Shown here in pieces: positions 21,714 to 41,214 of a stretch of 64,000 nt of DNA (the stretch's first letter is position 1; every line of letters begins with the position of its first letter). The stretch lies in the sequence record OZ195776.1; one strand, written 5' to 3'. Below the pieces are notes generated by a model that was given only the letters and a program-made list of their open reading frames with translations, did not search any database and was not told the DNA's origin. Made by a program: the position numbers and the translations under genes.

Positions 21714-23156
21714 TTAACCGCGGAAGAATTCCAGATCGTAGCGCTCGTTGCCAACCGCTTGCATCATGATCTTCACAGGTTCAAGCTCACCACCCAACAA
21801 GTTGGTTAGGATGCTTGGCGAACAGCCGCTTACTAGAGCAGTGCCCACTTCACCAGACTTAACTGGTACGTTGCCGATACGACCACGTAGGTTCCAGAAA
21901 ACCAGTTGTGGCATTTCGTAACCAGCTCGAGCGTACTCTTGCTTGATTACTTCCAAGTTGGTCTTCTGACCACCGCCCCAGTAACCTGCACCAGCTTGGT
22001 CGAATTCCATGTCTGACAGAATCAGCATCTTGGTTGGTAGGTCTTCTTGCGATAGACCCGCTTGAACTGCACGTTGCAATAGGACTCGGAAGACCTTGTT
22101 CACGTCAGTCGACATGTTTTCGCCTGAGCGATCCATGTTCATTAGGCGTTCGTGCAACGTTGCACCTTTCAGTGCGTGGAAGTGTGGGTCGCTTGAGAAC
22201 GAAATGAATTGGTTCTGGAAGATACCTTCATTGCGCTCTGCGATGTAAATGCCCAAAGACATTGCAACATCTTTACAAGTTACCGAACCAGTACCTGCGT
22301 TGATTGGAGTCTGCATAGAGCCAGACACGTCAACGATTGGCATGATGCGTTCGTCGCTACCTTCCATGTAGTTAGGTAGAGCCTTCCACTGTGCATCCGC
22401 TACGCGAGCATCACCTCGGTTGACTGACTTAACAATGTCGTATGGGTAAACCGCACCAGCGTTGATCTTCTCAGTGCCTTTTTCAAGACCTTGAATGTAC
22501 TGAGTGTACGTTTCCTGAGCGTTGCGACCAAACGCTTTTTGGTATCGAGCAGAAGCTACCGATGGTAGTTTGCCGAATTCAATTGCGTCCCACTCACGAG
22601 CACACATCTTCTGTTCAACGGTATCAGACAACATTGACAGAATCTTACGAAGCTGTTTGTTCTTGATATCAGCAGCTTTTGCAAGCGCTTTGAAGACATG
22701 ACCGTTTGCAGACTTCTCACGAGGAGTCCACTTCGCAGCAAGGCCGTTGCGCTCGTTTACCAACGCGTTCAGCCAAAGAGCTTCTGCATCAGCTTGAACT
22801 TGCGTACCAAAGGCAACCACAAGATCATCCCAACGACCAAGAGCTGGAACTTTGAACATTACTGCTCGCGCCAAATCTGGTTTCTCGTTACACAGTTTTG
22901 CGAATACCGTACGGAATACGTTACGCTCACCTGCACCACCACGAACGTCACGAGCCCACATCAAGATGCGAGTTGCAACTTCTTGGTTTTCACCGAACGC
23001 TCGGCTAAACAGAGTTACTGCTTCATCAGGAGTACGGCGAAGCGCACCAGCTGTGAAGAACCAGTCCAGACAAGCTGTACCGGATGTTGAATGTGTTACC
23101 GCACCGTTTTCAGTACGTGCGTCGTTTGTTTGCATTGCGTTCATAAAGTTGCTCAT
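21714..23156 (-). CDS. DUF2828-type Ro60/TROVE-like vWA protein
   Basis: T.NGA...STSG.ACLDWF, WARDVRGGAGER, GRWDDL, AAKWTPRE, IVDVSGSM MIDAS, ILSDMEFD, FWNLR. Confidence 0.85.
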   Translation of the reverse strand: MSNFMNAMQTNDARTENGAVTHSTSGTACLDWFFTAGALRRTPDEAVTLFSRAFGENQEVATRILMWARDVRGGAGERNVFRTVFAKLCNEKPDLARAVMFKVPALGRWDDLVVAFGTQVQADAEALWLNALVNERNGLAAKWTPREKSANGHVFKALAKAADIKNKQLRKILSMLSDTVEQKMCAREWDAIEFGKLPSVASARYQKAFGRNAQETYTQYIQGLEKGTEKINAGAVYPYDIVKSVNRGDARVADAQWKALPNYMEGSDERIMPIVDVSGSMQTPINAGTGSVTCKDVAMSLGIYIAERNEGIFQNQFISFSSDPHFHALKGATLHERLMNMDRSGENMSTDVNKVFRVLLQRAVQAGLSQEDLPTKMLILSDMEFDQAGAGYWGGGQKTNLEVIKQEYARAGYEMPQLVFWNLRGRIGNVPVKSGEVGTALVSGCSPSILTNLLGGELEPVKIMMQAVGNERYDLEFFRG

Positions 23157-33970: not shown

Positions 33971-34057
33971 ATTTTTCAAGTTCACACTTTTGATTAGTAC
34001 GGTAGTGACTCTCCGTAATGTGGTGACCCGCCGTGGACTCGAACCACGCCCTATCGA

Positions 34058-34534
34058 TTATTCTGAACGCTCTGTGCGTCTGCGTCTATACGTTGATGTT
34101 TGTGAATGACAATTTGGACACAACCAGGATAGGTTTTCCTTCCGATTATCGTTGCTAATTCCATTAACATGTTCCAGCTCCAATGTAAGAGGTTTCCCAT
34201 TCCAAGTATCCGGAATTCCACACTCATCACAGTGGTTTCGATAGAACCCTAATCGAATTGATATTTGTCGGGCGCTGCTACGAGGTGCAGTGCAATTCTC
34301 TACAAAGAACGATTCTTCGGTGTGTGAAAATTTATTACGCTTAAACGTCTTTTTAACATCAAAGTGTTCAGTAGACACGTCGTACTTATCACACAGCACT
34401 TTCAATCGATTTATATTGTATGTACAGACCGTTATACCAACACCACGGCACACATCACTCCAACAAAACGAATCACTTGCTACGGTGATTAGCTGTTCTA
34501 ACGTATAGTGCTTAAAATCTTTATTGCTTTTCAT
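34058..34534 (-). CDS. HNH homing endonuclease
   Basis: CDEC...LELEHVNGISNDNRKENLSWLCPNCH; stop codon overlaps the tRNA 3' exon. Confidence 0.92.
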   Translation of the reverse strand: MKSNKDFKHYTLEQLITVASDSFCWSDVCRGVGITVCTYNINRLKVLCDKYDVSTEHFDVKKTFKRNKFSHTEESFFVENCTAPRSSARQISIRLGFYRNHCDECGIPDTWNGKPLTLELEHVNGISNDNRKENLSWLCPNCHSQTSTYRRRRTERSE

Positions 34535-34540
34535 TTTCTA

Positions 34541-34578
34541 CTCCTACTGCTGATGTGTTATTTATACAGCAGTAGGAG
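34541..34578 (-). promoter_or_regulatory. Late promoter TATAAATA inside an RBS-sequestering hairpin
   Basis: 12-bp inverted repeat ctcctactgctg/cagcagtaggag; loop holds TATAAATA (34566-34559); 3' arm holds AGGAG 6 nt before the ATG. Confidence 0.85.
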
Positions 34579-34627
34579 ATAATGAGTCGATTGCTCTCAA
34601 CCAGGTGAGCTATCGGGCCACATAAAC

Positions 34628-36475: not shown

Positions 36476-36497
36476 TTTGTTTAATACATAATGTAAT

Positions 36498-36616
36498 CGG
36501 CCGGTGTAGGACTCGAACCTACGACCACGAGCTTAACGGGCTATTGAGTTTAGTGTGCGGTATCGATTCTTGACAGAATCATTTCATACGTGCTCTACCA
36601 ACTGAGCTAACCGGCC
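36498..36616 (-). tRNA. tRNA-Asn(GTT) with a 46-nt insert (36543-36588) at position 28/29
   Basis: Removing the insert gives stem CG|AGC / GCTCG with loop CCGTTAA. Confidence 0.8.
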
Positions 36617-36626
36617 ATAATTTATT

Positions 36627-37034
36627 TTACTCTGATTTAACATCCAAAGTAAACAGTTTTGCATTGCTTTCTTTCATCGGTTGAACGCCGACTATTTCTT
36701 CTGCAAGTAACGATGGGACAACTTGCTTCGGAATTTTGACGGTAACGCCACTTTCCTTTGCTTGCTCGCGAAGTTCTTTTGAACGTTCACGTAACATTGC
36801 AAGATGTTCTTCACGTTTTGTTACTATGTCATCAAGGTGCTCGTCGATAGTACCGATTTCGTACTTCTCACCGTAAGCAAAGGCAGTATGCCAGTGAATC
36901 TTTTTAAATTCAGCAATCTGCTTGATGTCTTTGATGACGCGTACTTCGTCGTAAACCCAACCACAGTTGATACATTCAATTGCGATTTGATCTCCGTTTT
37001 CATCGAAGAATAAAGCGTTACTTGGTAAACTCAT
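36627..37034 (-). CDS. Hypothetical protein
   Basis: 135 aa ORF. Confidence 0.65.
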   Translation of the reverse strand: MSLPSNALFFDENGDQIAIECINCGWVYDEVRVIKDIKQIAEFKKIHWHTAFAYGEKYEIGTIDEHLDDIVTKREEHLAMLRERSKELREQAKESGVTVKIPKQVVPSLLAEEIVGVQPMKESNAKLFTLDVKSE

Positions 37035-37060
37035 AATATAATCTCACGAAATAAAACAAT

Positions 37061-37190
37061 TGGTAGAGGGTGCAGGATTCGAACCTGCGCCACGGAATTT
37101 AAGAGTTTCAATGCAATTTTGGTTGCCGCAACTATTCTTTCCAGAATAATGTTTGTGCTACGTGTGCTTGCCGTTTTACACCAACCCTCT
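37061..37190 (-). tRNA. tRNA-Lys(CTT)-like with a 51-nt insert (37110-37160) at position 28/29
   Basis: Removing the insert gives CG|GAA / TTCCG around A-CTCTTAA-A; CCA encoded. Confidence 0.7.
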
Positions 37191-37289
37191 ACGAATTGTT
37201 CTAGTTGATAGATTCTGAGTTCATCTTTCACACTCAAGGTTCTATCGGACCTGCGGCTAAGTGACTAAGCTTCGCCGTTAAAATAAACA

Positions 37290-37431
37290 GGATGTACAAA
37301 TCTTCTGGTGCGTTTTCCAATTCGCTACCTCCCCGTCGATACATTATTGGTGGGGAGGGTTGGGATTCGAACCCAACTCATCACAAAAGTGAACCAGTTC
37401 TACTCGATTAATATTACGCTGTAGACATCCT
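37290..37431 (-). tRNA. Circularly permuted class II tRNA (Leu-like) flanked by the split mini-intron
   Basis: Minus-strand order: intron 3' half, 3' exon (variable arm, T arm, CCA at 37348-37350), 13-nt linker, 5' exon GGGGAGGTAGCGAATTGGAAAACGCACC, intron 5' half. Confidence 0.7.
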
Positions 37432-37436
37432 TAAAT

Positions 37437-37515
37437 TGGCCAGTAGTAAGGGACTCGAACCCAAGCACGGACTCCACGAGGGCGACTGCTTTACCTAACA
37501 TAAGCTAAACTACTT
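37437..37515 (-). pseudogene. Degenerate tRNA (anticodon stem unpaired; possibly Arg TCG)
   Basis: Acceptor, D and T arms and CCA present; anticodon arm does not pair. Confidence 0.55.
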
Positions 37516-37522
37516 TCAAATT

Positions 37523-37641
37523 TGGCGCGTGTGACAGGACTCGAACCTGTGACCTCCGGCGGGATTAATGTAATTGCTGTAACGATTCATTACTGAATCC
37601 ATTTATTAGGCCGGCATTCTAACCAACTGAATTACACACGC
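37523..37641 (-). tRNA. tRNA-Asp-like with a 42-45 nt insert in the anticodon loop (about 37564-37608)
   Basis: Asp-type D arm (ATTC/GAAT), stem CCGGC/GCCGG; same insert consensus; possible mature loop CT-ATC-CC. Confidence 0.7.
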
Positions 37642-37659
37642 GATGTTAAAAACAATTTG

Positions 37660-37780
37660 AGCAGCGTACAGGATTCGAACCTGTGTTACCTCCTGGAAAT
37701 GGAATTAGCGTTAGTTGCTGAAAGCATCTTTACCAAGATACATTGCTTTTAGGTGTCCTAGGCCACTAGACGAACGCTGC
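37660..37780 (-). tRNA. tRNA-Glu(TTC) with a 48-nt insert (37704-37751) at position 28/29
   Basis: Removing the insert gives CC|TCC / GGAGG with loop ATTTCCA; Glu-type D arm. Confidence 0.8.
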
Positions 37781-37807
37781 TCAAATTGTTTTTATTAAGT
37801 CTTATTG

Positions 37808-37931
37808 CCGGCGGGGCTGGATTCGAACCAGCGACCTCGTGCTCCCTATGCAATTAATAATTGGTTGCGGTACCCAATCTTTTCAGATTGGTTTATTAAT
37901 ACGCGCGCTAACCTGACTGCGCTACCCGCCG
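37808..37931 (-). tRNA. tRNA-Pro(AGG) with a 49-nt insert (37853-37901) at position 28/29
   Basis: Removing the insert gives CG|TGC / GCACG with loop ATAGGGA; Pro-type body. Confidence 0.8.
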
Positions 37932-38789: not shown

Positions 38790-39218
38790 TTATCTCCTTG
38801 TAAGCAAGAAATTACCGTTGCTGAATGAATACGCATATCCAATATCGCCAGCAAATCGTCTAGTTAAACGCTCATAGAGTTTCTTACGTGACGGTTCGTT
38901 ATCTGCCGCCTCGAAGTACAAATACATTGGTTGGTGATCGTGTAGCACCTCACGTACACCAGCTAACACTGTTCCCAATACAGTCAACTCACTGCCCGTA
39001 CCAGTAATACTCATATCTTGACCACGATCTCCAATTAACGCGAAGCTAATCGTCATCATGTCTTTCTGATATTCATACGAGGTTGTTAGTACGTACGTTT
39101 CTCCACCCACTTCAAACTCACCGTGTGATTGGTCGTGGGTATAGTTGTTGCTGTGATTCCAACGAATTGGTACAGATCTCTTGAGCGCCTCAACCATGTA
39201 TGTTTGAAGCGTCTTCAT
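38790..39218 (-). CDS. Hypothetical protein, paralog family 1 of 3, capsid-targeting-like N-terminus
   Basis: MKTLQTYMVEA; shared F.VG..Y...V...V...P..F.A...SRKKLY.RL..RFA...GY domain. Confidence 0.75.
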   Translation of the reverse strand: MKTLQTYMVEALKRSVPIRWNHSNNYTHDQSHGEFEVGGETYVLTTSYEYQKDMMTISFALIGDRGQDMSITGTGSELTVLGTVLAGVREVLHDHQPMYLYFEAADNEPSRKKLYERLTRRFAGDIGYAYSFSNGNFLLTRR

Positions 39219-39219
39219 A

Positions 39220-39921
39220 TTACCATTCCTCGAATGTAGCGTAAGCGTCATCGATATCGTCAGTTACGTACGAATCATCTTGATCAAGAATAATGTGACG
39301 TTTGCTTGTACCACGAACCACACCTGAGATAACAACAACATCGAAGCCGTCTTGCGACATGCCAAGAATTACCATTTCTTTACCAGGTTTCAACCAACGG
39401 AACTCACGAACTTCGAATGGGAACATCAAATCGTTTGAGTTATCGATTGCCAATTGCACTTCTTCTTCTGTCCATTCTGCATCTTTGCGTTGTGCACGAA
39501 CAAGAGTGTATTTGTTGCGATCGATTGTAAATGTGTAACCAGCGTCTTCTGCAAAGCGCTTAACAAGACGGTCGTACAATTTCTTACGGCTATCTCGTTT
39601 GTCGTCATGTTCGTAAGCAGTGAAGAAAATCTTCGTCGGGCTCTTGCGATCAATGTACTCTTTCACAGCTTTTAAAACTGAGGTGATAACTTTTAGCGTT
39701 TCGCTTGGTGAACCAGTTACGTTATTCGCAGAGACATTCATTCTGCCGCGTTCATTAACAGAACCGTAAGCTACTTCGGTGTATCCACCAAAACCAGCAA
39801 ATTCAATCACATACTGCGTTGAACCAACACGGAAGTTCGCGTCGTTGTCGTTTTTCCATTGAATTGGTGCGGCTTTCGCTAAGTCAAGCGCTTCCACCAT
39901 AAATTGTTTAAAGTCGTTCAT
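39220..39921 (-). CDS. Hypothetical protein, paralog family 2 of 3
   Basis: MNDFKQFMVEA; same domain plus a C-terminal extension. Confidence 0.75.
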   Translation of the reverse strand: MNDFKQFMVEALDLAKAAPIQWKNDNDANFRVGSTQYVIEFAGFGGYTEVAYGSVNERGRMNVSANNVTGSPSETLKVITSVLKAVKEYIDRKSPTKIFFTAYEHDDKRDSRKKLYDRLVKRFAEDAGYTFTIDRNKYTLVRAQRKDAEWTEEEVQLAIDNSNDLMFPFEVREFRWLKPGKEMVILGMSQDGFDVVVISGVVRGTSKRHIILDQDDSYVTDDIDDAYATFEEW

Positions 39922-39925
39922 TTCA

Positions 39926-40705
39926 TTACCTATCGTATTCGATGCGATGCTTATCAAGCACCTTGTAAGTTTCTGGATTTTTGAAAGATGTGCGCATATG
40001 TTTGACGTAACCGTTGGAGTAACCGTTAGCAGCCATCATCTCTCCAATCATTTTATCCAACGTGTCGACGTAATCGCCAAGAGGACCGATATGAGATAGA
40101 TCAACCACACCAGTAGTTGGTTCGTCTTCCATTGGATGAATGTTTACCACAACACCACCTGCGCCATTCGAGAACATACCAACACGTTTTTGGTCATTCT
40201 GATAGTTGATATCGTACAACACGCCTTTTGGAGCGTCTTTAACCAAATCATATTGCATTTTGTTCTTGAACGTGGCTGTTGATAACGAGTAACCGTATTG
40301 TTTACCCATTTTCTTAAACAACATCGAATACAGACGTTCGCGCTTCTTACGAAACTCTTCGTTTGAATCAGGATATGCCCAAGTTTGAATGCGAGTTGGT
40401 GAACACCAATCCATTGCTTGTTTTGCTGCTTCAATAACTGTCGCGAAAACTTGCAAAGCGTTATCGGTGTCTGTTTGATCGTTTGTCCAATCTCGCTTAG
40501 ATGCATCGAACGCCATGAAATGAATTTCCATGAGGTCGCTGGTCTTTTCCTCTGTCACGCCGCGATGAATAACGATCGCTTTGTACATCACCTTACCAAC
40601 TTGAAATATCCCCTCAAGTGGTCGATCGGAACGAACAGCATTGCTTTTCCAAGTAATCCGAGCTGGTTTATCAAACGCTTCAGTTAAGAAGGTTCTGAAT
40701 TCCAT
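39926..40705 (-). CDS. Hypothetical protein, paralog family 3 of 3
   Basis: MEFRTFLTEA; same domain plus a different extension. Confidence 0.75.
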   Translation of the reverse strand: MEFRTFLTEAFDKPARITWKSNAVRSDRPLEGIFQVGKVMYKAIVIHRGVTEEKTSDLMEIHFMAFDASKRDWTNDQTDTDNALQVFATVIEAAKQAMDWCSPTRIQTWAYPDSNEEFRKKRERLYSMLFKKMGKQYGYSLSTATFKNKMQYDLVKDAPKGVLYDINYQNDQKRVGMFSNGAGGVVVNIHPMEDEPTTGVVDLSHIGPLGDYVDTLDKMIGEMMAANGYSNGYVKHMRTSFKNPETYKVLDKHRIEYDR

Positions 40706-40758: not shown

Positions 40759-41214
40759 TTAGGCGCTCTTCTCAACCCAGTCTAAATCCAGTGGTTCGCT
40801 ATACTCGTCAATTAAATTGATGGGTTGCGAAATGTCCAGTGGTTTGACTGCATCGTCATATGACAATGTTATGTGTGCGTTGTACTCAGGAAAATCGTGA
40901 GTACCGCCTGCATCGATTAAATCATCGTGTCGATTTTTCAACCCTTCCGATTTCAATTTAACGATGACTACTGACTTGCCTTCTTGATCTTTCCAACTAT
41001 CAACTCGATAGGCTTCCGCGTCATACGAGTTACCGGTAGATGGAACTTCAATCCCATTACGACTGTATAACACAGTCGCGTGAAACTTACTTGATTCAAG
41101 AGGATTGTTCAGTTTGAGCGTTTTCTGCAGCTCTTGTAACCATTCAGAGCTCGCAGAGTCTACTTTGACACCAACATAAGTGCCTTGGTTTTCAAGAAAC
41201 TGCTGAAACTTCAT
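40759..41214 (-). CDS. 57B: Anti-CBASS nuclease Acb1 (gp57B, 2H phosphoesterase)
   Basis: FHATVLYSR and HDFPEYNAHITLSY (two HxT motifs), EYSEPLDLDW C-terminus as in T4 57B. Confidence 0.9.
   Translation of the reverse strand: MKFQQFLENQGTYVGVKVDSASSEWLQELQKTLKLNNPLESSKFHATVLYSRNGIEVPSTGNSYDAEAYRVDSWKDQEGKSVVIVKLKSEGLKNRHDDLIDAGGTHDFPEYNAHITLSYDDAVKPLDISQPINLIDEYSEPLDLDWVEKSA

What the first reader, a model, noticed from the sequence alone, without database searches (positions are those of the whole stretch)
37290..37431. Circularly permuted tRNA gene built as a natural permuted intron-exon construct
Minus-strand order: AGGATG-TCTACAGCGT-AATATT-AAT (3' half of the same element), the 3' tRNA half with variable arm, T arm and CCA, a 13-nt linker, the 5' tRNA half (GGGGAGG acceptor and D arm), then ...TTTGTA-CATCCT (5' half). 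The element is opened at its 6-nt loop and its stem closes the RNA ends. Permuted tRNAs are established in some algae and archaea and mature through a circular intermediate; I know of none in phages. The layout independently supports the element being a splicing intron. The anticodon (TAG, Leu) and exact junction are uncertain.
Basis: partly seen in the sequence, partly recalled or inferred. Interest (0 to 1): 0.9.

Follow-up and report, generated by a model that had tools for sequence, protein, structure and literature searches.

The report
Phage Y-RNA-like permuted tRNA mimic
The permuted tRNA layout is real, but it is most likely a phage Y RNA (a tRNA mimic that partners a Ro60-type RNA-binding protein encoded downstream) rather than a tRNA gene that has to be spliced back together.

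Summary
On the minus strand of 37431-37289 (one base longer than reported) lie, in order: one strand of a 7-bp stem, a conserved CUA-CAGCG motif, the anticodon-stem 3' strand, a variable arm, the T arm, the acceptor 3' strand with ACCA, a 13-nt linker, the acceptor 5' strand, the D arm, the anticodon-stem 5' strand and the other strand of the 7-bp stem. The same stem-plus-motif module, closed by a GNNA loop, interrupts five neighbouring tRNA genes.

The splicing/PIE reading is not supported. There is no group I core and no BHB motif, and no canonical anticodon loop can be formed.

The layout is that of YrlA-type Y RNAs, which are known tRNA mimics. I found 65 distinct units of the same design in IMG/VR phage contigs. 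Five of eight tested match Rfam YrlA below its threshold. In 19 of 19 loci that also hold a DUF2828/DUF7788 protein, the unit lies upstream on the same strand.

This window, Vibrio phage D479, encodes that protein at 23153-21732. Its predicted fold matches Ro60 structures.

Verdict: a new variant of a known kind. The module-bearing complete tRNAs next door remain unexplained.

The parts
37289..37431 (-). Whole Y-RNA-like permuted tRNA mimic (143 nt)
   Evidence: Sequence read. The fold gives a permuted cloverleaf closed by the terminal stem. Family signature and flanks match 65 IMG/VR units.
37425..37431 (-). Terminal stem, 5'-proximal strand AGGAUGU (equals the 3' strand of the hairpin in the neighbours)
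   Evidence: Pairs 7/7 with 37295-37289. Same 7-mer as IMG/VR units L183, L192 and L196.
37417..37424 (-). Conserved motif CUA-CAGCG (family consensus N-U-N C-N-G-C-R); proposed protein handle
   Evidence: U, C, G and C are invariant in 21 distinct copies. The CAGCG variant also occurs in an uninterrupted-topology copy, L076 396-515.
37393..37397 (-). Anticodon-stem 3' strand CUGGU
   Evidence: Pairs with ACCAG 37309-37305.
37381..37392 (-). Variable arm UCAC-UUUU-GUGA
   Evidence: Fold; ARAGORN drawing.
37359..37377 (-). T arm, 6-bp stem GUUGGG/CCCAAC with loop UUCGAAU
   Evidence: With the 7-bp acceptor this makes a 13-bp stack. ARAGORN can only force the standard 7/5 arrangement by accepting two mismatches.
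37328..37358 (-). Acceptor hairpin: CCUCCCC, A, CCA, 13-nt linker, GGGGAGG
   Evidence: Weak local match to Rfam tmRNA_permuted, which has the same local layout.
37310..37325 (-). D arm GCG-AAUUGGAAAA-CGC
37305..37309 (-). Anticodon-stem 5' strand ACCAG
37289..37295 (-). Terminal stem, 3'-proximal strand ACAUCCU, followed by GUUUAUUUU as in the family consensus
21732..23153 (-). Ro60-like protein gene (DUF2828 + DUF7788, 474 aa), same strand, 14.1 kb downstream; the inferred protein partner
   Evidence: tblastn 41% identity, E 7e-114. Pfam. AlphaFold2 model with its 13 best Foldseek matches all Ro60/TROVE structures.
36497..37931 (-). Five tRNA genes carrying the closed form of the same module: 37931-37808, 37780-37659, 37641-37526, 37190-37061, 36616-36497
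   Evidence: ARAGORN with introns, Rfam, motif scan.

Best explanation
The element is a phage-encoded Y RNA of the YrlA type.

What it is. The RNA folds into a tRNA-like body with D arm, T arm, variable arm and a 7-bp acceptor stem. Its 5' and 3' ends pair to form a rod that extends from the anticodon stem. The rod consists of a 7-bp terminal stem, an asymmetric internal loop holding the conserved U-N-C-A-G-C-R motif, and a short inner helix (GAUU/AAUC).

How it most likely works (inferred). The rod is the handle for the phage's Ro60-like protein (window 23153-21732), and the tRNA-like body is the effector end. This follows what is established for Ro60/Y RNA particles, which tether Ro60 to partners such as PNPase and are linked to RNA quality control and repair.

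Processing (inferred). The acceptor stem has 7 bp and an encoded ACCA followed by a 13-nt loop. RNase P probably opens it at G37334 and the 3' side is trimmed back to CCA, giving a two-piece RNA held together by base pairing. This is what happens to Mycobacterium smegmatis YrlA.

What is shown and what is not. Shown here: the anatomy, the family and the synteny with the Ro60-like gene. Not tested: protein binding, processing and biological role.
For: (1) Anatomy.

(2) A family exists. Two IMG/VR pattern scans gave 65 distinct units built the same way. They share flanks that the patterns did not select for: TTTT before the unit in about 90%, and GTT after it in 80-100%. D479 has ATTTA|...|GTTTATTTT. 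Units L183, L192 and L196 share D479's terminal stem AGGATGT/ACATCCT and its ACCA-plus-linker acceptor loop. L161 shares the class II-like body with the module in place of the anticodon loop. Two units that were folded give permuted cloverleaves with z = -3.7 and -3.3.

(3) The Rfam YrlA model matches 5 of 8 tested units at exactly the unit coordinates, two of them over all 114 model positions. Scores are 32.9-37.3 bits.

(4) Synteny. Nineteen of 62 loci with a unit also hold the DUF2828/DUF7788 protein. In 19/19 the unit is on the same strand and upstream, 11 of them within 1.3 kb. D479 has the same arrangement at 14.1 kb, with the tRNA array in between, as in L082, L177 and L125.

(5) The protein is Ro60-like. 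The AlphaFold2 model (pLDDT 64) has Ro60/TROVE structures as its top 13 Foldseek hits, E 3e-7 to 1e-3, over about 500 aligned columns. GenBank annotators call homologues 'Ro-like RNA binding protein'.

(6) Literature. YrlA RNAs mimic tRNA with D, T, V and acceptor arms, lie near Ro60 on the same strand, and occur in phages. M. smegmatis YrlA is cut by RNase P and gains CCA (PMC4201824). Thermus phage phiLo Ro60 binds two Y-like RNAs encoded upstream of it (PMC12135203).
Against: - The D479 unit itself gets no YrlA match at E <= 10.
- Relatives that do match stay far below Rfam's gathering score (33-37 bits against 69).
- The YrlA motif GNCGAAN0-1G is absent. This family has U-N-C-A-G-C-R instead.
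- The Ro60-like gene is 14 kb away, not within the 4 kb typical of YrlA.
- Pfam does not call a TROVE domain in the protein, and the structural model has only moderate confidence.
- About a third of the IMG/VR units, and the closed-module tRNA genes next door, keep covarying anticodon stems and canonical 7-nt anticodon loops. A pure Ro60 tether would not need these.
- D479 has no close relative in any collection searched, so conservation of this particular copy cannot be measured.
Confidence: 0.7

Rival explanations
1. It is a true circularly permuted tRNA gene. The stem-plus-motif module is an intron that proteins excise (an endonuclease plus a T4-type RNA ligase). The halves are joined in the anticodon loop, and RNase P and 3' trimming open the acceptor end to give a working tRNA.
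For: - All tRNA parts are present and every helix formed between the two halves is perfectly paired.
- ACCA is encoded.
- ARAGORN accepts the joined halves as a tRNA.
- In the neighbouring genes, removing the module restores 5-bp anticodon stems that covary (CGAUC/GAUCG, CGUGC/GCACG, CCUCC/GGAGG, CGGAA/UUCCG, CGAGC/GCUCG) and canonical loops.
- The in-silico spliced group-5 tRNA aligns without a gap to uninterrupted tRNAs of other phages.
- KVP40 encodes RNA ligase 2, and T4 Pnkp/Rnl1 reseal broken anticodon loops (PMC2577357, PMC3400036).
Against: - No junction gives a loop with U33. The best analogy gives AGGUAGA with an A31/A39 mismatch.
- The acceptor/T stack has 13 bp.
- Most family members close the acceptor with 2-5 nt and have no discriminator or CCA.
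- There is no BHB motif, no group I core and no known bacterial splicing endonuclease.
- The strict same-strand, upstream linkage to a Ro60-like gene has no place in this model.
Confidence: 0.1
2. It is a non-functional by-product of recombination in a tRNA array that is prone to tandem amplification: what is left of two tandem copies of a module-bearing tRNA gene, broken at the palindromic hairpin.
For: - The region holds degenerate tRNA-like pieces at 37520-37440 and about 37260-37235.
- T-even phages amplify tRNA segments in tandem (PMC13096335).
- The copy is unique to D479 among 50,697 GenBank phage records.
Against: - The flanks show no homology to the 'missing' halves.
- Both break points fall exactly at the ends of the 7-bp stem.
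- The same design recurs 65 times in unrelated contigs, with conserved flanks and conserved synteny.
- All helices are intact.
Confidence: 0.08
3. It is a tRNA-shaped decoy or sensor that works without Ro60, for example by soaking up host nucleases or toxins that target tRNA.
For: - Phage tRNA loci are known counter-defence loci (PMC13096335).
- Many family members display complete anticodon arms with varied anticodons.
Against: - The D479 copy has no anticodon loop to offer.
- The linkage to the Ro60-like gene is unexplained.
Confidence: 0.07
4. It is a two-piece (permuted) tmRNA.
For: Weak local match to Rfam tmRNA_permuted over the T arm, acceptor and linker (18.6 and 16.0 bits).
Against: - Position 3:70 is G-C, not G-U.
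- There is no room for a tag reading frame or pseudoknots.
- ARAGORN finds no tmRNA.
- The match covers only the part that any permuted tRNA would share.
Confidence: 0.01

Closest known systems
YrlA-type bacterial and phage Y RNAs (Salmonella, M. smegmatis, mycobacteriophages; Rfam RF02553; Chen et al. 2014, PMC4201824)
   Same: - tRNA-like body with D, T, V and acceptor arms.
- The RNA termini pair to form a rod where the anticodon loop would be.
- The acceptor is closed by a loop.
- Encoded upstream of a Ro60-type gene on the same strand.
- A 7-bp acceptor stem, which in M. smegmatis YrlA allows RNase P cleavage and a CCA end.
- Relatives of the D479 unit align with the Rfam model.
   Different: - It lacks the GNCGAAN0-1G motif and has U-N-C-A-G-C-R after a 7-bp terminal stem.
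- The partner protein is the DUF2828/DUF7788 branch, which Pfam does not recognise as TROVE.
- The Ro60-like gene is 14 kb away, across a tRNA array.
- ACCA is already encoded.
- The same handle also occurs in closed form inside complete tRNA genes.
Yrl1/Yrl2 of Thermus phage phiLo with phage Ro60 (PMC12135203)
   Same: Phage-encoded Y-like RNAs lie upstream of a phage Ro60. That Ro60 structure (9kop/9l5y) is the best structural match of the D479 protein.
   Different: The phiLo RNAs were found through a CGAA motif. No sequence relation to the D479 unit was tested. The host and phage type differ.
Circularly permuted tRNA genes of Cyanidioschyzon merolae, other algae and Thermofilum (PMC3978253, PMC3400036)
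   Same: The 3' half lies upstream of the 5' half with a short intervening linker, and the flanks pair with each other.
   Different: Those genes mature through a BHB motif, a splicing endonuclease and a circular intermediate into ordinary decoding tRNAs. Here there is no BHB, no known endonuclease, no canonical anticodon loop, and a link to Ro60.
Two-piece (permuted) tmRNA
   Same: The local order T arm, acceptor 3' strand, CCA, linker, acceptor 5' strand.
   Different: No G3-U70 pair, no tag reading frame and no pseudoknots.
Permuted intron-exon (PIE) group I constructs
   Same: Only the formal topology: intron halves outside, exons inside.
   Different: No group I catalytic core. The module is about 45 nt.

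Membership tests
YrlA / Y RNA-like (RF02553) | 5' and 3' termini pair to form the Ro-binding stem; the tRNA-like domain is at the other end | tested here: met
   7-bp terminal stem plus an inner helix leading into the anticodon stem.
YrlA / Y RNA-like (RF02553) | tRNA-like D arm (GG), T arm (GUUCGAAUC-type), V arm and acceptor-like stem | tested here: met
YrlA / Y RNA-like (RF02553) | GNCGAAN0-1G motif near the 5' end | tested here: not met
   The 5' region reads AGGAUGU-CUA-CAGCG-UAAUAUUAAUCGAG. The family consensus is AGGAUAC-UUA-CAGCAA.
YrlA / Y RNA-like (RF02553) | Score at or above Rfam's gathering threshold (69 bits) | tested here: not met
   No hit for D479 at E <= 10. Relatives score 32.9-37.3 bits.
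YrlA / Y RNA-like (RF02553) | Encoded near a Ro60 orthologue on the same strand | tested here: inconclusive
   Same strand and upstream, but 14.1 kb away. At family level it is 19/19 same strand and upstream, 11 within 1.3 kb. The protein is Ro60-like by fold, but Pfam calls no TROVE domain.
YrlA / Y RNA-like (RF02553) | Bound by Ro60/Rsr in vivo | not testable with these tools
   Needs immunoprecipitation or EMSA.
Circularly permuted tRNA genes (algal/archaeal type) | 3' half upstream of the 5' half of one tRNA | tested here: met
Circularly permuted tRNA genes (algal/archaeal type) | Bulge-helix-bulge motif formed by the flanks | tested here: not met
   The strands between the anticodon stem and the terminal stem carry 2+3 nt on one side and 8+15 nt on the other around a 4-bp helix. 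No 3-4-3 BHB can be drawn (manual inspection).
Circularly permuted tRNA genes (algal/archaeal type) | Product is a canonical decoding tRNA (7-nt loop, U33, 12-bp acceptor/T stack) | tested here: not met
   None of the enumerated junctions gives U33. The stack has 13 bp.
Circularly permuted tRNA genes (algal/archaeal type) | Circular RNA intermediate | not testable with these tools
   Needs RT-PCR or RNA-seq.
Group I intron / PIE | P3-P9 catalytic core, omega-G, U-G pair at the 5' splice site | tested here: not met
   No Intron_gpI or ribozyme hit at E <= 10. The module is about 45 nt.
Two-piece tmRNA | G3-U70 pair, tag reading frame, pseudoknots | tested here: not met
   G3-C70. Only 17 nt lie between the D arm and the terminal stem. 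ARAGORN finds no tmRNA.

The most novel reading that the evidence does not exclude
The stem-plus-UNCAGCR module is a genuine intron removed by proteins. It interrupts the anticodon stem at nt 28/29, the anticodon loop or the variable region. On this reading, the closed-module genes and the permuted units that keep canonical anticodon arms yield real tRNAs. The Ro60-like protein could then act as chaperone, with a T4-type ligase sealing the nick. This would be the first tRNA splicing outside the group I type, and the first permuted tRNA genes, in viruses of bacteria.

A milder and likelier version: phages graft a portable Ro60 handle onto complete, anticodon-bearing tRNAs, so that Ro60 particles carry tRNA bodies as decoys, sensors or repair substrates.
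Probability: 0.1. Interest if true: 0.95.

Novelty: new variant of a known kind. Interest (0 to 1): 0.55.

Why it matters
Y RNAs that mimic tRNA are known, but they have been found almost only next to proteins annotated as TROVE, using a model built around the GNCGAA motif.

Three points stand out here.
It has a different handle motif and a DUF2828/DUF7788 Ro60-like partner, and it falls below Rfam's threshold. It is therefore unannotated. In D479, two spurious protein genes are annotated across the element.
- D479 is a cultured T4-type vibriophage, so the system can be tested at the bench.
- The same handle sits, closed, inside 4-5 otherwise complete tRNA genes in D479 and in every KVP40-like phage examined. 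KVP40 annotates these as pseudo-tRNAs. This links Ro60 biology to anticodon-bearing tRNAs and to the tRNA-centred arms race between phages and bacterial defences.

Tried and rejected
- **Close relatives of D479, to test conservation.** None found. Searches: blastn against 50,697 phage records with the native and the un-permuted order; an exact 24-mer in IMG/VR; a gapped acceptor pattern in JGI metagenomes; the neighbouring ORF against 5.8 billion proteins; gp57B-based loci, which brought only other T4-like phages.
- **Permuted units in KVP40, nt-1, D482, R11Z, V07, ST2, VS1, QD01.** None.
- **Known ribozymes or introns in the module.** No Rfam match. A Dictyostelium Class I RNA hit (19.5 bits) is a chance resemblance of UUACAGCAA.
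- **BHB motif.** Cannot be drawn.
- **gp57B as a splicing phosphoesterase.** It is Acb1, an anti-CBASS protein.
- **ORFs inside the tRNA cluster as processing enzymes.** No Pfam hits.
- **Decayed partner halves in the flanks.** No homology.
- **My interim view that G instead of A in CAGCG marks a pseudogene.** Dropped, because CAGCG occurs in an intact closed-module tRNA, L076 396-515.
- **My interim view that the inserts sit in the anticodon loop.** For most copies they sit in the 5' strand of the anticodon stem at 28/29.
- **Representative IMG/VR units against GenBank phages.** No match.
- **Literature searches for permuted or intron-bearing phage tRNAs.** Nothing relevant.
- **Not attempted.** A covariance model of the new family was not built.

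Full report
**Source and setting.** The window is 100% identical to Vibrio phage D479 (OZ195776.1), a 258-kb T4-type phage related to KVP40. Window position w corresponds to record position 186000 + w. The minus strand carries 25 ordinary tRNA genes at 29.6-35.6 kb. Upstream of them on that strand, at 37.9-36.5 kb, lies a group of odd tRNA genes. The GenBank record annotates two short 'hypothetical proteins' across the element in question.

**The observation.** Reading the minus strand from 37431 to 37289 gives the parts in this order:
- AGGAUGU
- CUA
- CAGCG
- 19 nt
- CUGGU
- a UCAC/GUGA variable arm
- a T arm (GUUGGG-UUCGAAU-CCCAAC)
- CCUCCCC-A-CCA
- a 13-nt linker
- GGGGAGG
- UA
- a D arm (GCG-AAUUGGAAAA-CGC)
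- ACCAG
- AAGAUUUGU
- ACAUCCU

The 3' half of a tRNA therefore precedes its 5' half, and the two ends pair over 7 bp.

- The minimum-energy fold is exactly this permuted cloverleaf (-43.2 kcal/mol, z = -2.4).
- Standard finders miss it.
- ARAGORN accepts the halves as an 85-nt tRNA once they are joined in silico.

**The shared element.** Five neighbouring genes are tRNAs interrupted by 37-55 nt: 37931-37808, 37780-37659, 37641-37526, 37190-37061 and 36616-36497. KVP40, VH7D, nt-1, D482, R11Z, V07, phi-ST2, VS1 and QD01 each have 4-5 such genes. KVP40 annotates them as pseudo-tRNAs.

All inserts share one module: a 7-bp hairpin with conserved top pairs C-G and U-A and a GNNA loop, then N-U-N, then C-N-G-C-A. 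The hairpin covaries strongly:
- 96.6% of stem cells are paired.
- All 7 pairs show changes on both sides.
- 0 of 500 shuffles reach this.
- Slid controls give 35-49% paired.

The D479 permuted element has the two strands of this hairpin at its two ends, the 3-nt spacer, and CAGCG.

**Where the inserts sit.** For most copies the insert is not in the anticodon loop. It lies in the 5' strand of the anticodon stem between nt 28 and 29. The two nucleotides after position 26, plus the three nucleotides that follow the insert, form a perfect 5-bp stem with 39-43. The sequence of that stem differs between genes: CGAUC/GAUCG, CGUGC/GCACG, CCUCC/GGAGG, CGGAA/UUCCG, CGAGC/GCUCG. The stem encloses loops such as AUAGGGA, AUUAGGA, AUUCUAA and CUGUUAA. 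The in-silico spliced group-5 gene aligns end to end with uninterrupted tRNAs of other phages. In KVP40 groups 3 and 4, and in the permuted copy, the module occupies the loop itself.

**No support for a self-splicing intron.**
- Rfam finds no group I intron or ribozyme at E <= 10.
- The module is about 45 nt.
- No bulge-helix-bulge can be drawn.
- For the permuted copy no junction yields a canonical loop.
- Its acceptor/T stack is 13 bp.

**The turning point.** Pattern scans of IMG/VR built from the module showed that it is widespread in large phage contigs. My permuted-layout scanner then found the same design again and again: 65 distinct units.

Each unit runs as follows:
- one stem strand
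- N-U-N
- CAGCA
- a T arm
- the acceptor 3' strand
- a short linker, mostly 2-5 nt without CCA
- the acceptor 5' strand
- a D arm
- an A-rich stretch
- the other stem strand

The flanks are conserved, although the patterns did not select for them:
- Consensus: ...CCA-N-TTTT|unit|GTTtTaTT
- D479: ...CCA-ATTTA|unit|GTTTATTTT

Two units that I folded give permuted cloverleaves with z = -3.7 and -3.3.

Particular relatives of the D479 unit:
- Units L183, L192 and L196 share D479's terminal stem sequence and its ACCA-plus-linker acceptor loop.
- L161 shares its class II-like body, with a rod in place of the anticodon loop.
- CAGCG also occurs in an intact closed-module tRNA (L076).

These contigs carry very large tRNA arrays and nothing else known to Rfam at its gathering threshold.

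**Identity of the family.**
- A Pfam survey of 108 neighbouring ORFs showed DUF2828 + DUF7788 as the commonest families.
- tblastn found this roughly 470-aa protein in 19 of the 62 loci that hold a unit. In all 19 the unit lies upstream on the same strand, from 29 nt to 12 kb away, 11 of them within 1.3 kb.
- Homologues occur in 710 GenBank phage records, where some are annotated 'Ro-like RNA binding protein'.
- D479 encodes one at 23153-21732 on the minus strand. The unit is therefore upstream on the same strand, 14.1 kb away, with the tRNA array in between.
- An AlphaFold2 model of the D479 protein (pLDDT 64, pTM 0.57) has Ro60/TROVE structures as its 13 best PDB matches: Thermus phage phiLo Ro60, Deinococcus Rsr, and Xenopus and human Ro60 (E 3e-7 to 1e-3).
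- The Rfam YrlA model matches 5 of 8 tested units at 32.9-37.3 bits, at exactly the unit coordinates, two of them over all 114 model positions. All are below the gathering score of 69.

**What the literature says about YrlA.** The topology is the published one (PMC4201824). YrlA RNAs have tRNA-like D, T, V and acceptor arms, and their termini form the Ro-binding stem. They lie near Ro60 on the same strand and occur in 254 bacteria and 22 phages. M. smegmatis YrlA, which has a 7-bp acceptor stem, is cut by RNase P and carries CCA. Phage Ro60 with upstream Y-like RNAs has since been characterised in Thermus phage phiLo (PMC12135203). Jumbo-phage TROVE proteins with 'a tRNA-like partner' are noted in PMC7824862.

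**Conclusion.** The element is best explained as a Y RNA of the YrlA type, not as a tRNA gene awaiting splicing. I put this at about 0.7.

Caveats:
- The D479 copy itself does not score with the Rfam model.
- The GNCGAA motif is replaced by U-N-C-A-G-C-R.
- The Ro60-like gene is distant.
- Binding is untested.

Rivals:
- A true permuted tRNA gene with protein-mediated splicing: about 0.1.
- A recombination remnant: about 0.08. The flanks show no trace of the missing halves, and the design recurs elsewhere.
- A Ro-independent decoy: about 0.07.
- A two-piece tmRNA: about 0.01.

**What remains unexplained.** The same handle sits, closed, inside complete tRNA genes with covarying anticodon stems and canonical loops. 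About a third of the IMG/VR permuted units also keep a canonical anticodon arm. Either Ro60-type particles in these phages are built on anticodon-bearing tRNA bodies, or the module is removed by an unknown enzyme. Either outcome would be new. D479, being a cultured phage, is a good place to test it.

Noticed in passing
window 36497-37931 (-): 37931-37808, 37780-37659, 37641-37526, 37190-37061, 36616-36497; also L001, L003-L008, L049-L051: Five tRNA genes in D479, and 4-5 in every KVP40-like vibriophage examined, are interrupted by the closed stem-plus-UNCNGCA module. In most the insert lies between nt 28 and 29 of the anticodon stem, and removing it restores covarying 5-bp stems and canonical loops. 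KVP40 annotates them as pseudo-tRNAs. Whether the module is removed or kept is unknown.
   Followed up: partly
window 37647-37667/37774-37794, 37794-37815/37925-37946, 37049-37071/37184-37206: The module-bearing tRNA genes are bracketed by inverted repeats of 21-23 nt. These extend the acceptor stem into leader and trailer, so the discriminator/CCA region would be base-paired in the precursor. Ordinary tRNA genes do not usually show this.
   Followed up: no
L008, L007, L005 (KVP40, VH7D, R11Z group 2) and window 37190-37061: After in-silico removal of the module, some of these tRNAs have 8- or 9-nt anticodon loops (AUUCAUAA, AUUUCCAA, ACUCUUAAA). Several others have A34 anticodons (AGG).
   Followed up: no
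window 37440-37520 (-): A degenerate tRNA-like element with a GCCA end, a 3-bp T stem and one acceptor mismatch lies directly upstream of the permuted unit. It gives a weak Rfam YrlA hit (16.6 bits). It could be a second Y-like RNA or a decayed tRNA.
   Followed up: no
IMG/VR loci L094-L213 (e.g. L097, L187, L133, L082, L089): The 65 permuted units fall into classes: module at 28/29 with canonical anticodon loops (UCU, GAU, UGA, GUU and others; 20 units); module after a complete anticodon arm (11 units); and forms without an anticodon. One scaffold (acceptor GCGTAGA/TCCACGC) carries several different loops, some with only 6 nt.
   Followed up: partly
window 40759-41214 (-): The gp57B homologue, labelled 'RNA ligase' in the D479 record, is Acb1, the anti-CBASS 2H phosphodiesterase (Pfam PF23474, E 4e-40).
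   Followed up: yes
window 38790-40705 (-): Three consecutive ORFs (142, 233 and 259 aa) all match the same PHROG families of unknown function (phrog_6387, 16075, 27801). They form a paralogous trio between Acb1 and the tRNA group and were not seen at this position in KVP40 or nt-1.
   Followed up: no
window 36627-37034 (-): A 135-aa ORF inside the tRNA group carries a short match to the N-terminus of the major capsid protein Gp23 (Pfam, residues 97-133) and is annotated 'major head protein'. Its only relative among 5.8 billion proteins has 41% identity.
   Followed up: partly
window 34021-34619 (-) (L002 9282-9880): With introns allowed, ARAGORN calls a tRNA-Ile(AAU) split by 522 nt that contain the annotated HNH endonuclease gene. 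It may be a spurious call or a tRNA gene disrupted by a homing endonuclease.
   Followed up: no
L128 2902-2989 (+): A weak tRNA-Sec match (35.1 bits, below the gathering score) lies just downstream of the Ro60-like gene in an IMG/VR contig.
   Followed up: no
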